Positions 29,717 through 46,000 are shown, numbered from the stretch's first letter. The stretch is DNA of 64,000 nucleotides from Anaeramoeba ignava BMAN (GCA_028826165.1 JAPDFW010000126.1:62001-126000), one strand, 5' to 3'. The notes: a model not told the origin generated them from the letters alone. Translations and numbers: made by a program.

Positions 29717-31094
29717 TTACAAATTTTCCAAATCTTTTTGATTTTTTTCATATTTAATTTGATTAATAATTTTTTGAATTCTTGATAAATTAACTTTTCT
29801 TGAATTTATTACTTGGTTTGTTTGATTTTCTTTAATTGTTTTTCTAATCCTAATAGGATTTTTTTGATATATTTGATTTTTTGGATAATTTTGATTATTT
29901 TGATTTAATTTTGGGAATTTTTTAAAACGAGAATTTTTTTTCAAAATTGGACGAATTATTCTTTGATTTGGAATTAAATCTTTTTTTTCTGGTTCAATTT
30001 CCTTTTTCTTCAAAGAAACCTCTAAATGTTTTAAATAAATTTCTTTTTGATTTAATTCAATTTCTTTTTGATTTAATTGATTTTCTTTTTGAATTAATTG
30101 ATTTTCTTTTTGAATTAATTGATTTTCTTTTTGAATTAATTGATTTTCTTTTTGAATTAATTGATTATTTGGATTTTGATTTGTTTGAATTTGAGTATTA
30201 AAAATGAAAGAATTTCTTTGTAAATTAATTTGAGTAATTTTAGCAAGAATTTCTGAAGCAGAAGGTCTTTTATTTTTCTAAAATTCAAATTAAATTAAAA
30301 TTCATTTTGAATTTAAAATTAAAATCGGATAAAAAATTTACATCAACTTGAAGCATTTCGGAAATTAAATCAAAAAGTTCAGAAGAATAAAAAGAAGGTA
30401 AATTTTGAAATTTTCCTAAAGAAATTTTCTTTCCCAATTCTGTTAAACTAAAAGCCTCAAAAGGAGGAGATAAACAAGCCAACTCATAAATCAAACAACC
30501 TAAAGACCAAATATCAGTTTTATCATCATGAATATTTCCGGCAAATTGTTCAGGTGACATATAAAAAGGAGTTCCAACATGAGTATGAGCAAATTGAGAA
30601 TCAGAATTAAGAGCACGAGCTAATCCAAAATCACCCAGTTTGATATTTTTTTGATTGTCAAGAAAAATATTATCAGGTTTAATGTCTCGATGAAGAATTC
30701 TCTTTCGATGACACTCAAACAAAGCAAGAATTATTTGAGTGAAAATTTTCCAAATTTTTGATTCTTTAATAAATGTGTTTTTTTTCTTATGCTTTTGTAT
30801 CATTTTGTGTAAATCCCCACCTTCACAATATTCCATTACAATAAATAATCTTTTATGTTTTGTATCAAGAACCCTTTCCAAATATCCAACAATATAAGGA
30901 TGTTCAAGTTCGCGAAGAATATTAACTTCTCGAACAATTAATTCTAATTCTTTTTCACACATTCTTCCAAAATATATTTCTTTCCAAACAAATATTTTTG
31001 AATCTGATATTCTTTTGATTTTTTTAACGATTCCAAAACTTCCTTTTCCAATAACTTCTAATTCTTGATATTTTCCAATTTGTAAATCAGTCAT
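29717..31094 (-). CDS. NIMA-related (NEK2-like) Ser/Thr kinase with coiled-coil tail, 1 intron (~30342-30278)
   Basis: GKGSFG, FVWKEI, EVNILREL, IVMEYCEGGDL, HRDIKPDN, DFGLAR, VGTPFYMSPE; frame continues through QLIQKEN repeats into the 29717-30013 ORF. Confidence 0.9.
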
Positions 31095-31399
31095 TAATTC
31101 TTTTTTTTTTTTTGACAATAAAATAAAACAAAAATGAAACAAAAATGAAACAAAAGAAAGAAAGAAAGAAAAATGGAATTGATTTTTTCTTTTTCTTTTT
31201 CTTTTTCTTTTGATTAATTAAAATTGAAATTGAAGAATTAACGAATAATATTAACGTTAATTGAAAAGAAGAAAAAAAAAATGGAAAAAAAGTGGAAAAA
31301 AAACGTTAATATTAAATTTTTTGAAAAGAAAAAAAAAAAAGAAGAAAACTTGAGGAAAATTCTTGTTAGGAATTTTTTTTTGAAAGAATTTTTTTTTCA

Positions 31400-33229
31400 T
31401 CAATTATTTTCATCATCTTTTTCTTTTTCTTTTTCATCATCAGATTTCTTTTCTTTTTCATCATCAGATTTCTTTTCTTTTTCTTTTTCATCATCAGATT
31501 TCTTCTCTTTTTCATCATCATCAGATTTCTTCTCTTTTTCTTTTTCATCATCAGATTGCTTTTCTTTTTCTTTTTCATCATCAGATTTCGATTTCTTTTC
31601 TTTTTCTTTTTCATCATCATCATCATCAGATTTCGATTTATATTCCTTTTCTGTGGAATCTTCATCATCAGATTTCTTTTTATCTTGTTTTTGGACATTT
31701 TCTCTAAAATATTTATGTTTATTCTCCAAAAAAAGGTCAATAAAATTTTGTCTTTCTTCTTTTGAACGGAAAACCAAATGAATATTTTTGGATTGAATAC
31801 TAATTAACAAAGAATTATTAGCTTTTGAGATTGAAATCTGCATATCCTTTTCATAAATAAAAGGAGCATTTCCCTTAGGCAAAGTGACTAAAAGAGATTT
31901 AGGTTTAACAGAAATTGTTCCAAGTTGTTTTGTAGAAATGATATAAATATGAAATTCATTTGAATTAAGTTGAATATTTTTTGTTGGTTGAAAAATCTCT
32001 TGAAAATCTTCCACTTCATTATTAACTTGTTGATTTTCATTATTTTGATTTTTCTCTTCTTTTTCACTACTATAATGATCACTAACTTCTTGTTCTTTTG
32101 AATCAGATAAATCCTCTTCCAAAATTGGTTCTTCTTCTTTTAAACTTTGTTTGAATTTTTTTAAATATTTTATAAAAGCATTTTTCATTTCCGTTGCAAT
32201 TTCTTCTGTTTCAACTTTTAAACAAAATAAACCTTGATTTTTGAGATGAATAGTCCAATGAAGTGGTGATTGTTTGTTCTCTAGTATTTCAATATCTTCA
32301 TCATTTTGTGAAAATTTGTTTTGGAAATGAACAAATTCTCCTTCAACTAACATTAATCCTTTTCGTTTGATAATTAATTTTACTTTTGAAATTTGAAGTC
32401 CAAATGGTGTTGTTAAGACACACTTTTTAATTTTTAATTTTTAATTTTTAATTTTAATTTTAATTTTAAATTAATTTTAAATTAATTTTAATTTTAATTT
32501 TATAAATGAATTTTAATTTTAATTTTAATTTTAATTTTAATTTTAATTTTAATTTTAATATCAAAATGAATTTTATAAATGAATTTTAATTTTAATTTTA
32601 ATTTTAAATGAATTTTAATTTTAATTTTAATTTTAATTTGAATTTTTAAATGAATTTTTAAATGAATTTTTAAATGAATTTTTAATTTACATCAAAAGAT
32701 TTCCTGATTCTTGTTCCAATATATTCAAGTGTTGGTTGTTGTTGTTCTTGTTTTAAACGTTGAAGTTCAGCTTTTTTTTGAGAAATTAATTGACCAAAAT
32801 TACTTGCAAAAGTAGGAGAATCAAATTTTAATTGAAATCTAATAGTTCCACCAATATATAAAAGAATTTGATTAGGTTCTTTTTGATTTAAATAAGCCTA
32901 AAAAAAAAAATTTCAAAGAATCAAAAAAAAAAAGCAAAAAAAAATTTTTAAATTAAAAAAATCGTTTTTTGCTTTTTTTCCGTTATTTTAATTTATAATT
33001 TACAGTTGAATCTGTTTGAATTTTAAATTTTTCTTCTTTTTTAGTTCTTAAATTAAAAAAAGTTAATTGAATTGATTCTATTGTTATTCTGTAATAATCT
33101 GAATCTTTTTTGTTATCAAGAATAATTTGTGCATAAAATGGTAAGTTTTCTTCTGACTTTTTTATATTTTTTATATAAAAAAATTATTATTTTATTTGTT
33201 TTTTTAATTTCATAAATTTTTTTTACCAT
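31400..33229 (-). CDS. Hypothetical protein with possible tandem PH-like domains and an acidic (KKSDDEKE)n tail; 4 exons
   Basis: ATG immediately followed by GT; exons ~33157-33004, 32898-32691 and 32423-31400 splice in frame. Confidence 0.65.
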
Positions 33230-33631
33230 TTTTTTTTATTATTGTAATTTAAATTGAATTGAGGAAAATCTTTAAAAAAAGAAAAATGAAAAAATGAAAA
33301 AATGAAAAAATAAAATTTTTTTTTCTTCATTTTTAATAAAAGAAAAATCAACATTTAATTTTAATTTGAATTTGAATTTAAATTTTAATTTTAATTTTAG
33401 ATTTGAATTTGAATTTTAATTTTAATTTTAATTTTAATTTTAATTTTAAATTGAATTTTAATTTTAATTTGAATTTGAATTTGAATTTGAATTTTAATTT
33501 TAATTTTTAATTTTAATTTTAATTTTAAAATGAATTTTAATTTGAATTTTAATTTTAAATTTTAATTTTAAATTGAATTTTAATTTGATTGGAATTTTTG
33601 GATCTTATTTTTGGATCTTATTTTTTGGATC

Positions 33632-36600
33632 TTATTTTTTTGTGAGAACTTTTTTAAGATCTTCAATCCAAGGAATTAAAGCAGAAAGATATCCATTTGG
33701 AGAACGATAATCACCTTCACCAAGAGGTAATAAACTTTTCTGACTTAATTCTGAAAGTTTTTTGAAAAGTAATTTTCCAGCGATATTGAAATGAGGATAA
33801 AAAGAATCACCAACTCCAAAAACAGCAAATTTAAGTTTATTCAAAGAATTGGGAGACAAAGATTTCAAATGATTCCAAAAGGAAGTGGCATTTTCAGGAA
33901 AAGATCCATTCCAAAAAGTGGAAGTGACAAAAATAATGGTTTTTTCATGTTGAAGTGAAGCGAAATTAAATGAATCCATTTCAAGAACTCGTGATTTTGC
34001 TTTGAAACTGCATTCTTCTCCAATTCGAAAAGCAACTGTTTCGGCATCTCCAGTTTGAGATCCGTAGAGAACAAGAAGACCATTTTTTTGAGGAATATTT
34101 TCATTAATTTGACGTCTTTTTGTTTGCGGTGTTTTTTTTGTTTTAAGAGATGAGTAATGAATCGGATGGAAATTTTGTGTATGGAGATATTCATAAGAAA
34201 TATGAATTGAAGGTGATTTAAAGAAATCAGTATAAAGTGTTTGAACATCTGAATTATCGTTTGGATTTTGAATTGAAAATTTTGAAGTGATTTGATTGGA
34301 ACATACAATTCTTTTTGGAAGAATATTCATTTTTGATTTAGGTTGTCCACCTCCTCCAATACATCCTCCTGGACATGCCATAATTTCAACAAAATCGAAG
34401 TCATGATTTCCTGATTGCACTTTGTTTAAGAATGTTCGAATGCTGGATGATCCATCAATTACTGCTACTTTGATTCTTCTTCCTTCCATCATTAGTGTTC
34501 CTTCTGTCATGTTCGGGATTCCAAAAACTTCATTCATTTCTAATTTTGGAAATTCTTTTCTTGTTTGTGATTCATATAAACAACGAAGAGTAGATTGCTA
34601 TTTTTGAATTTGAATTGAAATTTATTTTTAAAGAATTTGAATTGAAATTTGAATTTAAATTGAAATTTGAATTTTAATTTGAATTTTTTACTAAAACACC
34701 TCCAGCAACAGAGAACGAACATCCAGCTGATGATGTTATAGAAAAAGGTGGATCAAAAGAATCTTCTTCAAGTTTCCGTAAATCAATAGAATGATTTTGA
34801 AGGATTTTTCCAAACTCTCTTACAGTAATTGATAAATCAACATCAGAAATATTTTCAGATTGAATATTTTTCAATTTATTCTGATATTTGTTTGCAATAC
34901 AAGGAGTGATCGTAACACATCGAATATTTTCAGGAGATTTTTCCAATTTTTGAGCAAAATAGCTTTTGACAACTGATCCAAAAATTTGGTTTGGTGATTT
35001 TGTTGTTGATAAATGAGGAATCAAAGAAGGATAAAGTTTTTCAATCATGTAAACCGAAGAAACACAATTTGATGTTAAAATAGGTAAAATAGCTTGAGTA
35101 TCATTAAGTCTTTTCATTAATTCTGTTGAAAGTTCAATAGCATAAATATCTGATGAAAATTGAAGACTAAAAATTGTGTGAAATCCAAGAATTCTTAATG
35201 ATTTAACAATTTGTCCTGGTGTGATTGCACCTAATTCCTTGCCATAAAGTTCACTAATTGTTGTGAATAAGGAAGGATCAATTCCAACAACAAGATGATA
35301 ATCATTTTTTTGAGTTAAGAATTGTTCAAAGATGTGAGTTTCATCAAATTCAGAAAGAGCATCACTTGGGCAATAATAACTATTAGAAAATTTTTAATTT
35401 GATTTAAATATTTTGATTTGATTTAAATATTTTGAATTAATTTGAATATTTTGAATTAATTTAAATAATTTGATTTAATTTGATTTGAATATTTTGAATT
35501 GATTTAAATATTTTAATTTAATTTAAATATTTTAATTTAATTTAAATATTTTGGTTTGATTTAAATATTTTGATTTGATTTAAATATTTTGATTTAATTT
35601 AAATATTTTTGATTTGATTTAAATATTTTGAATTAATTTAAATATTTTGATTTAATTTAAATATTTTTGATTTGATTTAAATATTTTGATTTAATTTAAA
35701 TATTTTGATTTAATTTAAATATTTTGAATTGATTTAAATATTTTGGATTGATTTAAATATTTTGAATTAATTTAAATAATTTGATTTGATTTAAATATTT
35801 TGAATTAATTTAAATATTTTGAATTAATTTAAATATTTTGAATTAATTTGAATATTTTGAATTGATTTAAATATTTTAATTTGATTTAAATATTTTAATT
35901 TAATTTAAATATTTTAATTTAATTTAAATATTTTGAATTGATTTAAATATTTTGAATTGATTTAAATATTTTGATTTGATTTAAATATTTTGAATTGATT
36001 TAAATATTTTGAATTAATTTGAATATTTTGAATTAATTTAAATAATTTGATTTAATTTGATTTGAATATTTTGATTTGATTTAAATATTTTAATTTAATT
36101 TAAATATTTTGAATTAATTTAAATATTTTAATTTGATTTAAATATTTTGATTTAATTTGAATATTTTGATTTGATTTAAATATTTTAATTTGATTTAAAT
36201 AGTTTGATTTGATTTAAATATTTTGATTTAATTTAAATATTTTGATTTAATTTGAATATTTTGATTTGATTTAAATATTTTGATTTAATTTGAATATTTT
36301 TGATTTAATTTGAATATTTTTGATTTGAATTTAAATATTTTGATTTAATTTGAATATTTTGATTTAATTTAAATATTTTAATTTGATTTAAATAGTTTGA
36401 TTTGATTTAAATATTTTGATTTAATTTAAATATTTTGAATTGATTTAAATATTTTGAATTGATTTAAATATTTTAATTTGATTTGAATATTTTGAATTGA
36501 TTTAATTTAAATATTTTGAATTAATTTGAATATTTTGATTTGATTTAAATATTTTTGATTTAATTTGAATATTTTTGATTTGAATTTAAATATTTTGAAT

Positions 36601-39600
36601 TGATTTAAATAGTTTGATTTGATTTAAATATTTTGATTTGATTTAAATATTTAGAATTGATTTAAATATTTTGAATTGATTTAAATATTTTGATTTGATT
36701 TAAATATTTTAATTTAATTTAAATATTTTGATTTGATTTAAATATTTTGATTGATTTAAATATTTTGATTTGATTTAAATATTTTGAATTGATTTAAATA
36801 TTTTGATTTAATTTAAATATTTTGATTTGATTTAATTTAAATATTTTGAATTGATTTAAATATTTTAATTTGATTTAATTTAAATATTTTGAATTGATTT
36901 AAATATTTTAATTTGATTTAAATATTTTAATTTGATTTAAATATTTTGAATTGATTTAAATATTTTTGATTTGATTTAAATATTTTTGATTTGATTTAAA
37001 TATTTTGAATTAATTTAAATATTTTGATTTAATTTAAATAATTTGATTTAATTTGATTTGAATATTTTGATTTAATTTAAATATTTTGATTTAATTTAAT
37101 TCAAATATTTTAATTTAATTTAAATATTTTGGATTGATTTAATTTAAATATTTTGAATTGATTTAAATATTTTGAATTGATTTGAATATTTTGAATTGAT
37201 TTAAATATTTTGATTTGATTTAAATATTTTGAATTGATTTAAATATTTTGATTTAATTTAAATATTTTAATTTACGTGCATAAACCACAATAAATACAAT
37301 CAGAATCACTTAAAGATTTCCCATTTACTTTTAATGTTGATTGATGAGGACCTTCAGTTTCTTCAAGTGAAAAAACAGAAATTCCTTGAATTCTTGAACA
37401 AACTTAGAAAGAAAAAAAGAAAAAAAGAAAAATCAAAAACATGATTTGAATATTTAATTTGGGAAAGATAAAAAAAATATACCTTGTTCACATCTTCCAC
37501 AATCAATACATTTAGATAAATCAAGAGTAACTGCTTGAGTTGAATTATCAATGAAACATTGATTGGAACTTTGCAAAAAATCAGTTAATTCATTTGAATT
37601 TCCCATTTTTTCAGACATTAAATTCATATTTCGTGATTCAATTTTGGAAGTTAAATTCAAAAGACTTTTACGTAAACTTTCCTTTGTAAGATCAGTATCA
37701 GTTCTTATATTCATTCCTTCTCTAATAGGAGTAGCACAAGAACAACATTTTTTGAAGGAATGACCAATTCCTTCAATTTCAACAACACAAAATTTGCAAG
37801 TAGCCAAAGGATGAAGACTAGGATGATAACATAAACTTTGCACATTTGCTCCTGATTTGCGACAAGCCTCAAGAACATTTAAATTGGAATCAACATGACA
37901 TCTTTTGCCATTAATAGTGACAACCACTTTAGTTTGACTGACATTTTTTCCTTTTAAAACAAAATCCTTTTTGAATCGAGTGATTTTTTCTTTTTCTTGT
38001 TGAATCAATGAAAGCGAACGTGAACGTGATTTGGAATATGAACTAACAAGAGGCCAACGGATGATATTCCGATCTTCTGAACCACTAAGAATAGCGCCAC
38101 TTGGGCTTATTTTGATTGTTGATATCGGCGCACTGTGTCCTTCAAGTAAAGATACACAACTTTCGTTATTTAAATTCCATACTTTGATTTTTCCATCAGT
38201 TCCTCCAGATACTAAATATGAATCTTGCATTTGGATTACCCTTACTTTCCCTGCGTGTGCTGATATAAACTTCCCTTTGCTCTTTTTCTCAGAAAATATT
38301 CCAATTTTTCCATCCCATGAACCACTGTAGATTTTATTGTTATAAAGAAGTAATTGAACAACTGCATATTCATGTCCTTCATATGTTTTAATACATTTTC
38401 CTGACTAAATAAATTTTATTTTGAATTTGATTTTGATTTTAATTTTGAATTTGAATTTGATTTTGAATTTACTTTGGTATCCCAAGATTTAATTGTACAA
38501 TCTAAATAATAAAAGAAATTAAAAAATTTATTAAGAATTTTAATTTCAAAAAAATCATAAAAATTATTTTACCATTTGAACCAGTATAAAGAATTTGTTT
38601 TTCTTCATCAAAAGCCATTGAAAGAACCCAATTTTGATGACCTTTAAAAGTTAAAATTTGTTGAGAATTCTAAAAATGAAAGAAAAGATAATAAATATTT
38701 ATTTTGTTTTGAATATTTAATATTTATTAAATATTTATTTAAATATTTGATTTATTTTAAATATTTATTTGATTTATTTTGAATATTTAAATATTTAATA
38801 TTTTGAATATTTAAATATTTGTTTTGTTTTGAATATTTAATATTTATTTAATATTTATTTAATATTTATTTAATATTTATTTTTAATATTTATTTAATAT
38901 TTATTTAATATTTATTTAATATTTATTTAAATATTTGTTTAATATTTTGAATATTTTAATATTTGTTTTGTTTGAATATTTAAATATTTGTTTTTGTTTG
39001 AATATTTAAATATTTAATATTTTGAATATTTAAATATTTAATATTTTGAATATTTAAATATTTGTTTGAATATTTGATTTATTTTAAATATTTAATATTT
39101 ATTTAATATTTATTTTATTTAAATATTTATTTAATATTTATTTTGTTTTTAATATTGAATATTTATTTAATATTTAATATTTAATATTTATTTTGAATAT
39201 TTAATATTTAAATATTTGATTTGTTTGAATATTTGATTTGTTTGAATATTTTTTTAAAATACTTCAACATCCCATAAAATAGCTTGTGAATCCATTGAAG
39301 AAGAAAATAACCTCTTTTGGTCAATTGTTGCATATAATTGACTAATTTGATCAGTATGAGCAAGATATTGTCTAATAAGATTCCCATTTGAAGTATTCCA
39401 TAACTTAATTGTATGATCGACTCCACCTGAAAAAAGAAGGTCATTACGATTGTGAAAAGAAGAAACTTTGCCTTCATGACCCTTAAAAATAGTCAAGGGA
39501 TGATAATTCATAACATCCCAAGAAATCAACACTCCTTTAATATCACAACTATATAAAATTCCTTTATGAATATTAAGTGAATTAACAAATGATTCATGTT

Positions 39601-39960
39601 TAGAAAGTGTTGCAACACATTTTCCAGTCTTTTTTTGAAATGTTGAGAATTTTTTTATTTTTTATTTATTTTATTTAATTTATTTTGAGAAAATTCGTTT
39701 TCAAAATGAAAAATTTTTTTTTTTTTTTGCTTTTTACATCAAAATCCCAACATTTAATAACATTTTCATTTGCGCAAGTATAAAATTGATTTTCATCTGT
39801 TGAAACTTCTATTGAATTTATTGCACTTTCATGAGCTTCAACTTGAAATAACGGTTCAATTGTCTAAATTTATTTAAAAATTTGATTTTAAATTTATTTT
39901 TCCAAAAAAAATAATTATTATTGAGATCTTTACTTGTGTATTATTTGATGAAGTATTCAT
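33632..39960 (-). CDS. WD40-repeat / [FeFe]-hydrogenase-like / flavodoxin fusion protein (~1115 aa, 9 exons)
   Basis: Exons 39960-39934, 39863-39738, 39628-39263, 38669-38573, 38501-38473, 38404-37483, 37402-37276, 35379-34692 and 34597-33632 total 3348 nt, all GT-AG and in frame. ~8 WD40 repeats; 2Fe-2S domain (LCYH..TCKFC..SCATP); 2x4Fe-4S (CIDCGRC..VC; CIYCGLC..YCP); H-domain (TSNCVS, TPCIANK, EIMACPGGCIGGGGQP); small-subunit-like segment; flavodoxin (LYGSQTGDAE, TSTFWNG, FAVFGVGDSFY.HFN). Confidence 0.9.
35380..37275 (-). repeat. 1.9 kb intron of ~19-20 bp minisatellite (TTTAAATATTTTGATTTGA-like) splitting the second 4Fe-4S motif
   Basis: Lies between ...CGLC and TYYCP; GT/AG ends on the minus strand. 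Confidence 0.88.
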
Positions 39961-40041
39961 TGTCGATTTTTGATTAAAGTAATTAAAAAAAAAATGAAAG
40001 AAAAATGAAAAAAATATTTTTATTAATTTTTTATTTAATTT

Positions 40042-43000
40042 TTAATTTTTTTGATTTGAAAAATTTAATGTAAATTCATAAACTGAAACTAAATTCCCTA
40101 ATAAAATTATATTTTTTCGATCAAAATTATTCTTAATTTCATTATAAATTTGGGAATTTTTATCTTTAATTGAAAAAAGTAATAATTTTCTAAATGGATA
40201 AATTGGATCAAATTTTGTTGCAATTTTAGTTATAAATTGTTCTAATAAATCAATAAATTTATCAATATCAATATCAATTCTTTTTAAAGAGTTTTGTAAT
40301 TCATTAATTTGAGACTCTTCCAAACCAGATTTAAATTTTTCTGGAAGTTTTTCAATAATTTTTTTTAAATCATATTTTAAATGATTTTGAAAAAATAAAA
40401 GATGTTTTAATTTTGCTTGTTCTTTAAAAGTAGGTGAAGAAAGTCCAATATCATCAAAAATATCAATTTCCATTTTATTTTGTATAAATTCCATAATTGA
40501 TAATTCTGTTAATTCATTCATTTCATTTGATTCATTCATTTTATTTAAATCTTTCATTTTATTTAAATCTTTCATTTCATTTAAATCTTTCATTTTATTT
40601 AAATCTTTCATTTCATTTGAATTTTCCATTTCATTTAAATCTTTCATTTCATTTGAATCTTTCATTTCATTTGAATCTTTCATTTCAATCATTTTGCAAC
40701 TTGGAATCACAAGTTCAATTAATTCTTTGCATTTTCCATATAACCCATAATTTTCCAATTCATTTTTGATTTTTCTCCAAATTTTAATATCAATTTCTTC
40801 TTGTTTCCAATTTTCATTATTAAGAAATTCAATATCTAATTCTGGTTTTTCATCGTAATAAATAAAATTTTTAATTTTGGAAGATAAAATAAATGGTTTC
40901 TTTAAATTTTCAATTTCTTTTTTAATATAATTTTCAAAAATTTTAAGTTCATTAAATGAATTATTATAATTATTGATTTTCTCAAATTCTTTCATATCAA
41001 AATTGAAAAATTGAATTGAATTGAAATCATTTAAAGAAATTGGATAATTAATTTCTTGATTTTCATAATTCTCTTGATTAATTTTGTTAAAAATTGAAGA
41101 TAGTAATTTTGATTGAATAAATTTGTTATTAAGATTAATTCCATGTTGAATTAATGTTGAAATCATTAAATTATAGTTTTCTTTTCCTGGCAAACAAACA
41201 TCAATAAAAGATTCTTCATTAATTTCAATTATAAATTCATTGATTGGAATTTCATTCATAATTTGTAAATATTTTGTTTCTTTTGAACATAAATTCCAAT
41301 ATTCTTGAAATTGGAAATATAAATCTTGATTTTCATTTTCAATAGTATTTTTGAATTGAATTGTTCTGGATTCTTTTCTTGTTATTTTTTGATTAAATTT
41401 TTGCATTACATAACTTCCAAATTTGATAAATCCTTCAAATAAATTCAATATTTTCAATTCTTGGATATTTTCAATAACAAATTTAACAAATGGAAACATT
41501 ATTGAGTTTTCTTCTTTTTGATAAAATAAATTGATAACATGATATAAATTTGTTTTTGGTAAATCAAATAAATTTAATTTATCACTTGGTTGTTTGAATA
41601 TCTTCTGGATTTTCTTTGTGTTTTTAATAACTTTCTCGATAATTGTTGAATGATTTTTGTTATAAATATTTGAAAAAACTTCTTCAAATTTGTTTCTATA
41701 ATCTAAATCCAAGAAATTGTCTTTTCTGAATAACTTTTCAGGAATCTTATATTGAGAAATCAAATTCAAGGTTTCATGATAATAAAGAATTGTTTGGTAA
41801 TTTGATAAATTTAATAATCCTGATAAAATGGATAAATCATTCCCAATGTGTGATCTTAATTGATTAATTAATTCTTCTTGTGTTTCTGGTTTAAAAACAA
41901 AATTATTAATAAGTGAAATGAAATGTTTGGAAAATTTTTCTGATATTATTGAAATTGAAATAACTGAAAGATGAATAAATAAGCGAATAATTCTGAAAGT
42001 TATTGGATGCATTTTCCTAAATGTAAATGCTGGATTTGTATTTAGGAATTTAGAAACTGAATATGAAGTGCAATTTTCAAAAAATTTGGAATCAATTTTC
42101 TTTTGATTTTGATTTACTTTTAATTTGGATAAACAAAATCCACACCAATTTTGTAAATTAATATGTGAAAATTTAACAAAATTTAAATGATTTTTTTTGC
42201 ATAAAGACCATAAATTGAGTTTATCTTCTTCTTCTTTTTCATTTATAAAATCTGGATAAAATGAATAAGATCCCATTGAAGGCCAATATAATTTTTCAAG
42301 TAATTCTTGTTTTAATTTTGATTCTCCAACTTCGAATATAAGATCTGATGAAAACAAAAACTGAAATGGTTCAATTTTCAATCCACTAATAAACTCAATA
42401 GAATGAATTGCCATTTTGATAATTTCTTCATCTTCAATTTTTTCTTCAATTTTAGATAAATTTTGGAATAATTTGGAATCTAAATAACTTGTTCCATGTT
42501 CACTAACAAATCCAATATGAGATTCTGTAAATTGATTTAATAAATTATTTCCAATTTTGTTTTGTTCATAATAATGTATCAATGTTTTCTCTTTTTTCTT
42601 TCCTTTAATATTAATATCAAGAAAATCTTCTTGAAATTTATTAAGAATCTCTTGTGAAAATTTACATTCTTTAATTTTTTCATCAACAGAATTTTTGATA
42701 AATTTTTTGAGATTATTAATTCCTTGTGTTTTTTGAATTTCATTGTAAATAAATTTCAACCAAGTATCTTGTTTTTTTATTAAACTATTCTTCATTTTAT
42801 TGATAAATTTTTGTGGTTTTTGAATAAAATTTTTTCTTGATTTAAGAAATTTTGCAATTTTTCTAAGTGAAAATCCATCTTTGGAAAAGATTGCTATAAT
42901 ATTTTTGGATTTCTTTTTTTCTTGATCTTCTTTTCTTTGAATAAAATATTTGATTAATTTTTCATTTTCATTAAGAATTTTCATACAACAGATAAGAATA

Positions 43001-46000
43001 ATATTTTCTTGTTGATTTTCCAATAATTTTAAATTTGTTTTTTGTAACATTTCCTCAACAAAATTTATAATATCATCTTCTTCGTTTAATGAAATTAAAT
43101 TTGTTAATAATGGGATATAAACTGAATATAAAATTTCAATGGAATTTAATGATAATAAATAGTTTGTTTTGGGAATTAAATAATTGAAAAATTGTTGAAT
43201 ATTTGTGAAATCAAATTTTCCTTTCATTTTCTTATTGAAAAGTAATTTTTTGAAAATAATTTCTCCATAAAATGCCAAATATTTTATAAAATTTAAAATA
43301 ATAGAACGTATTTTTTTTCTATAATGATCAATATAATTTTCATTTAGAATTGAGAAATGTTTATTATTTTTGTGGAAAGTTTCTTCACAAATTGGACATT
43401 TGTTTTTGATTTTCATCTTCTTCTTTAGATTTAGATTTAGAATTAGAATTTGATTTAGAATTAGATTTAGAATTAGATTTAGATTTAGATTTAGATTTTC
43501 TTTTGGGTTTAATTGTAAGATAAATTTGTAATTTTTCTTTTTGTGATTTTTTGCAAATCAAAATATTATTGCAATTAACATTTTGAGAAAATAATTCTTT
43601 AATCAATTCACTTGTTATTTTGTTAATCATCATTTTATCTTCAATTATTTGATAAGTTTCTTCATTAAAATTTGTTAATTCAATTCCAAATTCATTTTTA
43701 AATAATTCTAAATTCCATTCATCATAAAGAGATTCAATTGATTTTTGTTTTTTTTCTGTTTTTCCTTCATTTTCAATCAAGAAATAAAATAATTCTTCAA
43801 TTTTTTTACTTTTTTCTTTGATTAAAAATTGTTCTTTTTGTAATTTTGGAATTAATTTTTTCATAAATGATAAAATTGAAAAGTGTCTAATTTTAGAAAT
43901 AATTTTAAAATATGAATCAATTTCAATTAAATTAATTAAATTTTGATGAATTTTTTCAAAATAAATTTTGTAAATTTCCATAAAAGAAATATCTTCTAAA
44001 TTTGAATTTTCTGATTTATAATTTTGAACCCATTTTATCAAAAATTCAATTTTAAATGAATTTAAAAAATTTTGTTGTTGTTGATTAAAAGATAGTTTGA
44101 TAAAATCTAATAATATCTTTCCAATAATTTCTTCATTTATTTTTTCTTTTTTAAAAATTTTCTTATTTCTTTTATCATTAAAAGGAATTTGAATAAATTC
44201 AGAAAATGGTATTTTTTGTTCTGAAATTGTTTGATATTGTTGAATTATTGAATAAATTATTGATATAAAAGGAATATCAAGTTCAATAATTTTGTTATTT
44301 TGATTTTCAATTTCAATTTCAAAGCAAGGAATTTCAAACTTATTAAAAAAAGTTTTCCACATATTATTTATAGTTTTTTGATCTGAATCTAATAATTTTA
44401 AATTTTCATTTTGATTAATATTCTTGAAAAATATTCCAATAATAACAATTATCATTTGAATAAATTTATCATATAAAGAAGGAGAAATATATATTTCATT
44501 TTCATTTTCATTTTCATTTTGATTTTCATTTTGTTGAATTATATTTTTAATTTCAGAATCAAATAAGAAATGATTTGTTTTAATTCCCAATTCAATCATT
44601 TCTCTTATTTTTTGTGAAAAGTTAATTTCATTTTTTGATGAAAATAATTCATTTTCAATAAATTTTGTTGTTTGAATAAATTTTTCACTTGTAAAATCTA
44701 TATTTCTTGAAATGGATATTTTCAAAAGTTTTCGATAAATTTCTTTCATTTTATTTTCTTTTTCAGAATCATTAATTGTATCAATTTTATGATTAAATTT
44801 TAAATCATTTATAAGAGGTAAAAATATTTTTGGATAAAGTTTTTCAATATAATAATATTCCCAATTCTTTTCAAAATAAAACGGAACATCTTTCATTTCA
44901 AATTGAGGAGATAAATGAATAAAGATAATTATATATTTTTTTTGATTTAAATTTTGTTCAATAAAAAATTTAATTTTGAAAAATAATTCAATTTCATTTT
45001 GTTGAAAATGAATAAAAAGTATTGATTCCCTATTTTTGATTGAAGATTTGATAATTTCTATCACTTTTTTTTCTGATTGAATATTGATATCTTGGATAGA
45101 ATAATTTTGTATTTTTTCTTGATTTATTTTCATTTTTGTTTCAAAACTTGTTGTAAAAATTATTGAATTTTGAATTTTGTTTCCAATAATTTCTTGATTA
45201 AATAATTCATCAAAATTTTTGAATGAAGAAGAAAAATAATCATTTAAAATATTATTAGTTTTTTCTTCTAAATTTTTTGATTTTGGTTTTGATTTTGATA
45301 TAAATTGTTTAACTTCATTCATTTTATAGAATTTACAAAGTTGAAATATTGTTTTCTTCATTATTTTTTCATTTAAATTTGAATTTAACTTTAAAATCAA
45401 AGAAATGAATAAATTTTCATTAAATCCAAAAATTAAATCTTTTGTTTGAATTTTGTTTCGTGTAATAGTTTCAATTGGATCAAAAAATTTATTAATTTTC
45501 TTGAGGAAATTTTGCTCTTTTTTGGATAAAGAAAAAGAATAATTAAAAAAGGAATTTAAAGAAGAAGTTGTTGATCCATCAATAAAATGTTTTTCAAAAT
45601 GATTTAATAAATTTTGTTCTTTGAATTCGTAATCATTTTCTTTTATTGTAACTAATACTAATCTAAATTTTGGATTGATAAATACTTTTCTTTCCTCATT
45701 ATAAAATTGAATTTTTGTATAAAATTTCCCATTTTCTTCATCAAAATTTTGATTGAGTAAATTGTTTAAAAATGGATATATTTTTTGATAATCAAAAATC
45801 ACTAATATTTTCCCTTCAGAAATACAATATTCAATATTAAATAATTTTTCTTTAATTTTTTCTTCTTTTGGGATTGTAGAAATATTTAATGGTTTATCAA
45901 ATAATAATAAATCTTTATCAAAAATAACAATTGAATCTGGGAAATATTTTTGATAAATAATTGAAAAAATTGAAATGTGTGAAATAATTAGCATTAAATA

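What the first reader, a model, noticed from the sequence alone, without database searches (positions are those of the whole stretch)
33632..39960. WD40 propeller - [FeFe]-hydrogenase-like - flavodoxin triple fusion
Seen: a 9-exon in-frame gene with ~8 WD40 repeats, 2Fe-2S and 2x4Fe-4S domains, an H-cluster domain and a C-terminal flavodoxin. The WD40-to-ferredoxin junction lies inside one exon (38404-37483) and the H-domain-to-flavodoxin junction inside another (34597-33632), so the fusion is not a gene-model artefact. Known: hydrogenase-flavodoxin/CysJ fusions occur in anaerobic protists, but I do not know of an N-terminal WD40 propeller on a [FeFe]-hydrogenase. Inference: no obvious organellar presequence, so probably a cytosolic protein coupling Fe-S/FMN redox state (H2, O2 or reductant) to protein-protein interactions. 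The three modules also parallel the cytosolic Fe-S assembly trio Cia1 (WD40), Nar1 (hydrogenase-like) and Tah18 (FMN domain), so a CIA-like role is an alternative hypothesis.
Basis: partly seen in the sequence, partly recalled or inferred. Interest (0 to 1): 0.92.

Follow-up and report, generated by a model that had tools for sequence, protein, structure and literature searches.

The report
WD40-propeller hydrogenase-flavodoxin fusion, catalytically degenerate copy
This is a real nine-exon gene of the anaerobic amoeba Anaeramoeba ignava that joins an eight-bladed WD40 propeller to an [FeFe]-hydrogenase and a flavodoxin; the architecture was found only in Anaeramoeba, and this copy has lost residues that hold the hydrogen-making iron centre.

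Summary
The minus-strand gene 39960-33632 has nine in-frame GT-AG exons. They encode 1115 aa, identical to GenBank KAJ5067518.1 ("iron hydrogenase", Anaeramoeba ignava).

Domain order: eight-bladed WD40 propeller, helical linker, [2Fe-2S] domain, two [4Fe-4S] motifs, H-domain, small-subunit-like helices, FMN flavodoxin. Both domain junctions lie inside single exons.

The architecture is a family. A. ignava has four copies. The scan had already flagged another copy on other DNA of this genome (s1-689316). A. flamelloides has at least eleven distinct copies, and one of its transcript contigs spans the WD40-to-ferredoxin junction.

In a maximum-likelihood tree all WD40-bearing hydrogenases form one clade (100/99). 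Its sisters are the hydrogenase-flavodoxin proteins of Trimastix and Paratrimastix. I found no WD40-hydrogenase outside Anaeramoeba, and no paper describing one. The key 2021 Anaeramoeba paper could not be read.

This copy keeps every Fe-S cysteine and the FMN motifs. It has lost C299, E279, K358, M353, Q325 and A230 (CpI numbering), so it is probably not an H2 catalyst. Three paralogues are canonical.

The CIA-trio idea is not supported.

The parts
39934..39960 (-). Exon 1 (27 nt; start codon at 39960; residues 1-9)
39738..39863 (-). Exon 2 (126 nt; WD repeat 1)
39263..39628 (-). Exon 3 (366 nt; WD repeats 2-4)
38573..38669 (-). Exon 4 (97 nt; first part of WD repeat 5)
38473..38501 (-). Exon 5 (29 nt; end of WD repeat 5)
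37483..38404 (-). Exon 6 (922 nt). One open frame holds WD repeats 6-8, the helical linker, the [2Fe-2S] Fer2_4 domain, a helical spacer and the start of the first [4Fe-4S] motif.
37276..37402 (-). Exon 7 (127 nt; rest of the 2x[4Fe-4S] motifs)
34692..35379 (-). Exon 8 (688 nt; most of the H-domain, including motifs L1 and L2)
33632..34597 (-). Exon 9 (966 nt including the stop). One open frame holds the end of the H-domain with motif L3, the small-subunit-like helices, a disordered linker and the flavodoxin.
38045..39936 (-). Coding span of the eight-bladed WD40 propeller (residues 9-335; includes introns 1-5)
   Evidence: Pfam WD40 3.1e-46. AF2 pLDDT 93, 33 strands. Best fold matches are Tako8, ODA16, FBXW7 and Rsa4, all eight-bladed.
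37694..37933 (-). [2Fe-2S] ferredoxin-like domain (residues 373-452; Cys 407, 418, 421, 438)
35349..37534 (-). Two [4Fe-4S] motifs (residues 506-575; Cys 514, 517, 520, 524 and 558, 561, 564, 568; spans introns 6 and 7)
35052..35075 (-). Degenerate motif L1: TSNCVSSV instead of TSCCPxW. C299->N; the cluster ligand C300 is kept.
34881..34907 (-). Degenerate motif L2: TPCIANKYQ instead of MPCxxKKxE. M353->T, K358->N, E361->Q; the ligand C355 is kept.
34340..34387 (-). Intact motif L3: EIMACPGGCIGGGGQP (M497, C499 and C503 kept)
34175..34294 (-). Small-subunit-like helices (residues 896-935)
   Evidence: Fe_hyd_SSU 1.9e-6
33668..34072 (-). FMN flavodoxin domain (residues 970-1104). Motifs GSQTGDAE, TSTFWNGSFPENA and FGVGDSFYPHFN are present. 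No FAD/NAD(P)H domain follows.
   Evidence: Flavodoxin_1 1.2e-27; sequence

Best explanation
This is a genuine, intact gene of Anaeramoeba ignava. It belongs to an Anaeramoeba-specific family in which a hydrogenase-flavodoxin fusion gained an N-terminal eight-bladed WD40 propeller once, before A. ignava and A. flamelloides split. That fusion type is also found in the Preaxostyla.

Shown:
- The gene structure, the domain order and the eight blades.
- A single clade of WD40-bearing hydrogenases.
- Canonical catalytic motifs in three A. ignava paralogues.
- In this copy, loss of C299, E279, K358, M353, Q325 and A230, while all cysteines of the [2Fe-2S] cluster, both [4Fe-4S] clusters and the [4Fe-4S] part of the H-cluster are kept, as are the FMN motifs.

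Inferred:
- The protein is cytosolic.
- It still binds its Fe-S clusters and FMN but cannot hold or operate the [2Fe] subcluster. It would then act as a non-catalytic redox module: an electron wire from FMN through the Fe-S chain, or a pseudo-hydrogenase.
- The propeller docks the module to an unknown partner or cell structure. In the canonical paralogues the same propeller would place an active, flavodoxin-linked hydrogenase at that partner.
For: Gene model and identity to KAJ5067518.1.

Domains.

Paralogues with the same two junction exons at C1, C104 and C138 (36-42% identity).

A. flamelloides members.

Transcript contig P0407 (568 aa: eight WD40 repeats, Fer2_4 and the start of the F-cluster; 99% identical to P0276).

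Careful ML tree: WD40-HydA clade 100/99; sister to Trimastix/Paratrimastix HydA-flavodoxin 96/99.

Residue states against CpI. Roles of these residues: PMC10147833.

AF2 models: full length pLDDT 89.6, with the core matching CpI at TM 0.86; propeller pLDDT 93, matching eight-bladed propellers.

No N-terminal extension: strand 9-11 is part of the propeller.
Against:
- Loss of activity is inferred from sequence only. S319, E282, R286, P231, S232, P324, M497 and all four cluster cysteines remain, so residual or altered chemistry is possible.
- The propeller's partner is unknown, and 'docking' is the generic role of WD40 domains.
- Cytosolic location is inferred only from the N-terminus.
- Absence outside Anaeramoeba rests on ranked lists (best 120-150 hits) and on databases poor in protist genomes.
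Confidence: 0.6

Rival explanations
1. Despite the substitutions, this copy is still an active [FeFe]-hydrogenase. It would be a cytosolic H2-evolving enzyme fed through its flavodoxin, like its canonical paralogues.
For: - The four [4Fe-4S]H cysteines, motif L3, P231/S232, S319, E282, R286, P324 and M497 are conserved.
- The fold is predicted with high confidence and matches CpI.
- The gene is intact.
Against: - C299 and E279, the first two steps of the proton path, are replaced by Asn and Leu.
- K358 and Q325, contacts of the distal CN ligand, are both replaced by Asn.
- M353, A230 and the CPxW part of L1 are also changed.
- These positions are invariant or nearly so in the 59 other sequences aligned; their roles are listed in PMC10147833.
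- From my own knowledge (not checked here), replacing K358 or C299 in CpI or HydA1 abolishes or nearly abolishes activity.
Confidence: 0.15
2. It is a redox or gas sensor. The degenerate H-domain and FMN would report the redox, O2 or H2 state, and the FBXW7-like eight-bladed propeller would pass this on by binding or releasing a partner, by analogy with sensory HydS-type hydrogenases.
For: - The proton pathway is altered while the cluster ligands are kept, as in sensory hydrogenases (my own knowledge).
- The propeller's natural fold neighbours include the substrate receptors FBXW7 and Cdc4.
- A similarly degenerate subgroup is kept in A. flamelloides.
Against: - Loss of K358 argues against any [2Fe] subcluster, which HydS-type sensors keep.
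- No PAS or other signalling output domain is present.
- No partner is known.
Confidence: 0.12
3. It plays a CIA-like role: a single chain combining the functions of Cia1 (WD40), Nar1 (hydrogenase-like) and Tah18 (FMN domain) in cytosolic Fe-S protein assembly.
For: - The three module types parallel the CIA proteins.
- Nar1 is itself a degenerate hydrogenase that binds the WD40 protein Cia1 in trans (PMC13451876, listed).
- This copy has lost catalytic residues but kept its cluster cysteines.
Against: - The hydrogenase part nests inside catalytic HydA, next to canonical paralogues.
- It keeps Fer2_4, 2x[4Fe-4S] and the small-subunit-like region.
- The propeller has eight blades. Its best sequence and fold matches are generic WD40 arrays, ODA16, FBXW7, Rsa4 and WDR5; CIAO1 is not among the top 60 sequence matches or the fold matches listed to rank 50.
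- No FAD/NADPH domain is present.
- The fusion arose in enzymes that still look catalytic.
Confidence: 0.05
4. It is an artefact or a decaying pseudogene: either two neighbouring genes wrongly joined, or a dead duplicate of a canonical paralogue.
For: - No expression data exist for this locus.
- The H-cluster pocket is degenerate.
- Two introns are filled with minisatellites.
Against: - Both junctions lie inside single uninterrupted exons.
- All nine exons are open, with eight GT-AG introns.
- Every Fe-S cysteine and the FMN motifs are conserved after divergence to 40-50% identity from the paralogues.
- The same junction is present on an A. flamelloides transcript.
Confidence: 0.04

Closest known systems
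Hydrogenase-flavodoxin proteins of Preaxostyla (Trimastix marina EP00771_P001054, 883 aa; Paratrimastix pyriformis KAJ4456293.1, 815 aa)
   Same: Fer2_4, 2x[4Fe-4S], H-domain, small-subunit-like region and a C-terminal flavodoxin without FAD/NADPH domains. They are the sister group of the WD40 clade in the tree (96/99).
   Different: They have no WD40 propeller, only 54-79 residues before Fer2_4. Trimastix has canonical L1 and L2 motifs; Paratrimastix L1 was a gap in my alignment.
'Fused' NuoG-like-HydA-CysJ hydrogenases of anaerobic protists (Trichomonas vaginalis, Pygsuia, Stygiella, Pelomyxa, Paratrimastix; reviewed in PMC10703272)
   Same: The same hydrogenase core followed by an FMN domain. 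They are about 44-45% identical to the canonical Anaeramoeba paralogue. Their cellular location and physiological role are likewise unknown.
   Different: They carry the FAD and NAD(P)H domains (PF00667, PF00175) and are proposed to make H2 from NAD(P)H. They have no propeller. This gene lacks the FAD/NAD part and has lost catalytic residues.
Clostridium pasteurianum CpI and the HydA subunit of bifurcating HydABC (PDB 4xdc, 8a6t)
   Same: The fold of residues ~371-946 matches (TM by target 0.85-0.86; phmmer 277-331 bits). The [2Fe-2S] cluster, two [4Fe-4S] clusters and the four H-cluster cysteines are shared.
   Different: In this gene the His-ligated [4Fe-4S] (FS4C) is replaced by a helical spacer, and C299N, E279L, K358N, M353T, Q325N and A230D are present. 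It also has the extra propeller and flavodoxin.
Nar1 / NARF / CIAO3 (hydrogenase-like CIA factor)
   Same: A hydrogenase-derived protein that keeps cluster cysteines but not H2 catalysis, and that works with a WD40 propeller (Cia1).
   Different: Different descent: this protein sits inside HydA. Nar1 lacks Fer2_4, a small-subunit-like region and a flavodoxin. In the CIA system the propeller is a separate protein.
Eight-bladed WD40 propellers (ODA16/DAW1, FBXW7/Cdc4, Rsa4/NLE1; designed Tako8)
   Same: Eight blades closed by an N-terminal strand. TM by query is 0.80-0.89 and rmsd 1.7-2.7 A for Tako8, ODA16 and FBXW7.
   Different: Only 20-29% identity. There is no F-box, UBL or other partner domain. 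Fusion to a redox enzyme is not seen in any of them.

Membership tests
[FeFe]-hydrogenase, catalytic group A (HydA) | H-domain fold (Fe_hyd_lg_C) with four Cys ligating the [4Fe-4S] part of the H-cluster (C300, C355, C499, C503) | tested here: met
   Pfam 1.4e-64. C670, C725, C869 and C873 are present. TM 0.86 to CpI.
[FeFe]-hydrogenase, catalytic group A (HydA) | Motif L1 TSCCPxW with the proton-relay Cys299 | tested here: not met
   The motif reads TSNCVSSV. C299->N, P301->V, G302->S, W303->S.
[FeFe]-hydrogenase, catalytic group A (HydA) | Motif L2 MPCxxKKxE with Lys358 contacting the distal CN ligand | tested here: not met
   The motif reads TPCIANKYQ. M353->T, K358->N, E361->Q. Residue role: PMC10147833.
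[FeFe]-hydrogenase, catalytic group A (HydA) | Motif L3 ExMACxxGCxxGGGQP | tested here: met
   EIMACPGGCIGGGGQP.
[FeFe]-hydrogenase, catalytic group A (HydA) | Proton pathway R286-E282-S319-E279-C299 | tested here: not met
   R286, E282 and S319 are kept. E279->L and C299->N.
[FeFe]-hydrogenase, catalytic group A (HydA) | H2 evolution/uptake activity and a bound [2Fe] subcluster | not testable with these tools
   Needs enzyme assay and infrared spectroscopy.
Protist hydrogenase-flavodoxin / hydrogenase-CysJ fusions | HydA core followed in the same chain by an FMN flavodoxin domain | tested here: met
   Flavodoxin_1 8.9e-27 at residues 970-1104. The junction lies inside exon 9. The protein groups with these fusions in the tree.
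Protist hydrogenase-flavodoxin / hydrogenase-CysJ fusions | FAD- and NAD(P)H-binding domains after the FMN domain (CysJ-type members only) | tested here: not met
   No PF00667 or PF00175 hit. The protein ends 11 residues after the flavodoxin.
WD40 beta-propeller | Tandem WD40 repeats forming a closed propeller | tested here: met
   WD40 3.1e-46. Eight repeats aligned across 18 family members. AF2 pLDDT 93 and pTM 0.89. Best matches are eight-bladed structures.
Nar1/CIAO3 | Descent from the Nar1/NARF lineage; no Fer2_4, small-subunit-like or flavodoxin parts | tested here: not met
   The protein nests within HydA next to canonical paralogues. Fer2_4, Fe_hyd_SSU and Flavodoxin_1 are present. No Nar1 sequence was put in the tree, so this is indirect.
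Cia1/CIAO1 | Specific similarity to CIAO1 beyond generic WD40 | tested here: not met
   CIAO1/Cia1 is absent from the 60 best PDB sequence matches and from the fold matches listed to rank 50. The model has eight blades.
Tah18/NDOR1 | Diflavin reductase: FMN plus FAD plus NADPH domains | tested here: not met
   Only the FMN domain is present.

The most novel reading that the evidence does not exclude
Anaeramoeba uses the propeller to pin hydrogenase-flavodoxin modules to a defined partner or site, for example a reductant source such as PFO or the hydrogenosome-symbiosome contact zone. Cytosolic H2 or electron flow would then be spatially directed towards its sulfate-reducing symbionts. The degenerate copy studied here would be a regulatory pseudo-hydrogenase or redox sensor that competes for, or gates, that docking site.
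Probability: 0.15. Interest if true: 0.85.

Novelty: new variant of a known kind. Interest (0 to 1): 0.6.

Why it matters
Multi-domain 'fused' hydrogenases of anaerobic protists are known, but their roles and locations are unresolved. A protein-interaction propeller welded to such an enzyme has three notable features. It has multiplied to four copies in A. ignava and at least eleven in A. flamelloides. It was found only in a lineage that lives in obligate H2 syntrophy inside a structured symbiosome. It has split into catalytic-looking and degenerate subtypes.

Together these suggest that hydrogen or electron metabolism is organised through specific protein contacts. The propeller also gives a direct experimental handle: pull-down with the WD40 domain, localisation, and activity of canonical versus degenerate copies. 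If the degenerate copies are pseudo-enzymes, they would be a second, independent case, besides Nar1, of a hydrogenase recruited to a non-catalytic Fe-S role.

Tried and rejected

2. Joined model. I never typed or assembled the spliced sequence. Exons were searched by reference until the representative search returned the identical deposited protein (P0001), which was then used by id. The script only tested each exon peptide as a substring.

3. Junction search. A word-indexed search with the junction region (P0001 150-560) was swamped by long bacterial and fungal WD40 arrays. Among the 120 rows listed, only three covered both parts, all from Anaeramoeba.

4. ESM Atlas. The feature search gave no usable hit. 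The shape search matched only the hydrogenase core to bacterial A6-type enzymes.

5. Literature. No paper held WD40 with hydrogenase, flavodoxin and HydA, with FeFe hydrogenase and hydrogenosome, or with Anaeramoeba in a relevant sense. Stairs et al. 2021, where Anaeramoeba hydrogenases were first described, is not held. The supplements of the genome paper mention only bacterial hydrogenases.

6. Orthology of the degenerate copies. The hydrogenase-part tree joins this gene to the degenerate A. flamelloides proteins (95/85, long branches). The WD40-only tree does not. I leave open whether the degeneration was shared or independent.

7. Rfam found nothing in the window.

8. The CIA hypothesis and the artefact/pseudogene reading were considered and rated low, as set out under the rival explanations.

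Full report
**Gene model**

On the minus strand between 39960 and 33632 lie nine exons. Every exon is bounded by AG...GT, and their phases add up to 3348 nt, i.e. 1115 codons plus a stop. I searched the model exon by exon, by reference, and never typed or assembled a joined sequence. The exhaustive representative search with exon 9 returned a deposited protein of exactly 1115 aa (P0001). Its source names are KAJ5067518.1 / A0A9Q0L7I9, 'iron hydrogenase [Anaeramoeba ignava]'. Each of my exon peptides sits in it at the expected offset. The window is contig C127 of a 42.8-Mb, roughly 18% G+C assembly.

**Domains**

Pfam on the separate exons and on P0001 gives:
- WD40 repeats (3.1e-46)
- Fer2_4 (residues 373-452)
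- Fe_hyd_lg_C (593-877, 1.4e-64)
- Fe_hyd_SSU (896-935)
- Flavodoxin_1 (970-1104, 8.9e-27)

Exon 6 is one open frame that runs from WD repeat 6 through the linker and the [2Fe-2S] domain into the first [4Fe-4S] motif. Exon 9 runs from the last H-domain motif into the flavodoxin. Neither fusion therefore depends on a splice prediction.

**Propeller and overall fold**

The sequence has eight WD repeats. AlphaFold2 models show 33 strands between residues 9 and 334 (full length: pLDDT 89.6, pTM 0.67; propeller alone: pLDDT 93.1, pTM 0.89). A 25-residue helix follows.

Foldseek places the propeller closest to eight-bladed structures, with TM by query 0.80-0.89: Tako8, ODA16, FBXW7, Rsa4 and Cdc4. 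Seven-bladed propellers score about 0.65. Residues ~371-946 superpose on CpI and on HydA of HydABC, with TM by target 0.85-0.86. The same core matches bacterial A6-type hydrogenases in the ESM Atlas.

**A family, not a singleton**

Six-frame searches of the genome with exon 6 and exon 9 find three more loci, on C1, C104 and C138. Each has the same two junction exons at 36-42% identity. They are deposited as KAJ5077271.1, KAJ5068775.1 and KAJ5066683.1. An earlier scan note had already flagged one of them (s1-689316).

A. flamelloides has many more. At least eleven distinct 90%-identity clusters are represented across two strains, counting P0005, P0153 and P0155 as well. Eight clusters have canonical motifs: P0005, P0153, P0155, P0276, P0277, P0278, P0279 and P0281. 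P0036 and P0161 (1393 and 1466 aa) are degenerate. P0404 (1464 aa) groups with them in the propeller tree, and a fragment from its cluster (P0026) shares their variant L3 motif.

One EukProt transcriptome ORF of A. flamelloides (P0407, 568 aa) contains the eight WD repeats, the linker, Fer2_4 and the start of the F-cluster. It is 99% identical to the genome-predicted P0276. This is transcript-level proof of the fusion for the family, but not for this locus.

**Origin**

I built a careful ML tree of the ferredoxin-to-H-domain part (28 rows, 514 columns, LG+C20+F+G4; one fragment left out). It puts all WD40-bearing proteins in one clade (100/99). Their sisters are the hydrogenase-flavodoxin proteins of Trimastix marina and Paratrimastix pyriformis (96/99). 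The hydrogenase-CysJ fusions of Stygiella, Chilomastix, Carpediemonas, Barthelona and Paratrimastix lie further out. The plain A. ignava hydrogenases (C83, C90) lie outside these.

The propeller was therefore added once to a pre-existing hydrogenase-flavodoxin gene.

Searches for the architecture elsewhere gave:
- Among the 120 best relatives of the canonical paralogue (length 624-1986 aa), only Anaeramoeba proteins carry WD40.
- Among the top 150 representatives for exon 9, the proteins I checked by Pfam or source gave the same result; the rest were judged only by length and match position.
- These are ranked lists, not exhaustive censuses.

**State of the active site**

Aligned to CpI, this copy keeps:
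- all four [2Fe-2S] cysteines
- all eight cysteines of the two [4Fe-4S] clusters
- the four cysteines of the H-cluster cubane (C300, C355, C499, C503)
- motif L3
- P231, S232, S319, E282, R286, P324 and M497

It has changed:
- C299->N and E279->L, the two proton-relay residues nearest the cofactor
- K358->N and Q325->N, which contact the distal CN ligand
- M353->T, A230->D and E361->Q
- the CPxW part of motif L1, which now reads CVSS

The roles of these residues are summarised in PMC10147833. The three A. ignava paralogues and eight A. flamelloides clusters have fully canonical motifs. P0036 and P0161 are also degenerate (K358->V, M497->R and others). The hydrogenase tree joins them to this gene at 95/85, but on long branches, and the WD40-only tree does not recover that grouping. 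Whether the loss is shared or parallel is open.

The FMN motifs GSQTGDAE, TSTFWNGSFPENA and FGVGDSFYPHFN are intact. This gene is 42-56% identical to the canonical family members in the Fer2_4, F-cluster and flavodoxin parts, against 23-44% in the propeller and 5-30% in the linker. This is a pattern of constraint on cofactor binding, not of decay.

The earlier notes s1-689391 and s1-689436 had suggested a catalytically dead domain. My alignment supports that reading.

**Location**

The N-terminus (MNTSSNNTQTIEPLFQVEAHE...) has no basic residue in its first 21 positions. It runs straight into the closing strand of the propeller. A cleavable presequence is therefore unlikely. This is inference only.

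**What it is not**

The CIA-trio idea fails as membership on every count:
- The hydrogenase part is a HydA by descent and keeps Fer2_4 and the small-subunit-like region.
- The propeller has eight blades and is no closer to CIAO1 than to generic WD40 proteins.
- The FAD/NADPH half of Tah18 is missing.

A functional analogy to Nar1, a hydrogenase turned Fe-S carrier that works with a propeller, cannot be excluded for the degenerate copies. However, the fusion arose in, and mostly persists in, enzymes that look catalytic.

**Surroundings**

- Upstream on the same strand, only 81 bp away, ends a long ORF that other notes call RNF213-like.
- Downstream are an unassigned ORF and a protein-kinase exon.
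- Nothing suggests a functional link, and Rfam finds nothing in the window.
- Introns 3 and 7 are AT-rich minisatellites.

**Literature**

The fused NuoG-like-HydA-CysJ hydrogenases are reviewed in PMC10703272, which states that their location is unknown. I found no held paper mentioning a WD40 or propeller on a hydrogenase. The Anaeramoeba genome paper and its supplements do not discuss host hydrogenase architecture. Stairs et al. 2021 could not be read.

**What could not be done**

**Verdict**

The architecture is real, conserved, multi-copy and, as far as I could search, confined to Anaeramoeba and undescribed in print, although the proteins are deposited under a generic name. This particular copy is most likely a non-catalytic Fe-S/FMN module on a docking propeller. 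I rate it a new variant of a known kind, of moderate to high interest.

Noticed in passing
window 35380-37275 and 38670-39262: Introns 7 and 3 of the gene consist almost entirely of AT-rich minisatellites. Intron 7 holds about 97 copies of a 19-bp unit (86% matches). The 3' flank (33354-33586) is a 6-bp repeat.
   Followed up: partly
window 39961-40041: Only 81 bp separate the stop of the upstream same-strand ORF (40042-43416, part of a gene other notes call RNF213-like) from this gene's ATG. The promoter must be very short or lie inside the upstream gene.
   Followed up: no
A. flamelloides proteins P0278 / P0395 (1707 / 1716 aa): In both strains one family member has a B-box zinc finger (1.3e-6) and filamin repeats (6.2e-14) in front of the WD40-hydrogenase-flavodoxin module. 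This is either a TRIM-like extension or a merged gene model.
   Followed up: partly
P0001 residues 453-505 (window 37535-37693): The His-ligated [4Fe-4S] domain (PF10588) of bacterial long hydrogenases is missing from the whole WD40 clade. It is also missing from the listed protist hydrogenase-CysJ/flavodoxin fusions, though some other eukaryotic hydrogenases in the same list keep it. In the model this stretch is a helical spacer.
   Followed up: partly
L029, L030, L031 (G000 C1:1683000-1691000, C104:1007000-1015000, C138:50000-58000): The three canonical paralogues have one large exon from WD repeat 6 to motif L1 and an intron just after L1. This gene has two extra introns in that stretch and none after L1. 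The intron before the last exon (after GGVL/GGVM) is shared.
   Followed up: partly
G000 C1:1678217-1678912 (L005) and C129:27011-27868 (L004): Two further, very divergent hydrogenase-like ORFs (522 and 445 aa) have altered L1/L2/L3 motifs. One lies only about 6 kb from the C1 WD40-hydrogenase paralogue. Whether either is the Nar1 orthologue was not determined.
   Followed up: no
window 30285-31142 (-): A protein kinase domain exon (Pkinase 3.2e-62) lies downstream of the gene. The ORF at 31400-32353 (-) has no Pfam match.
   Followed up: no
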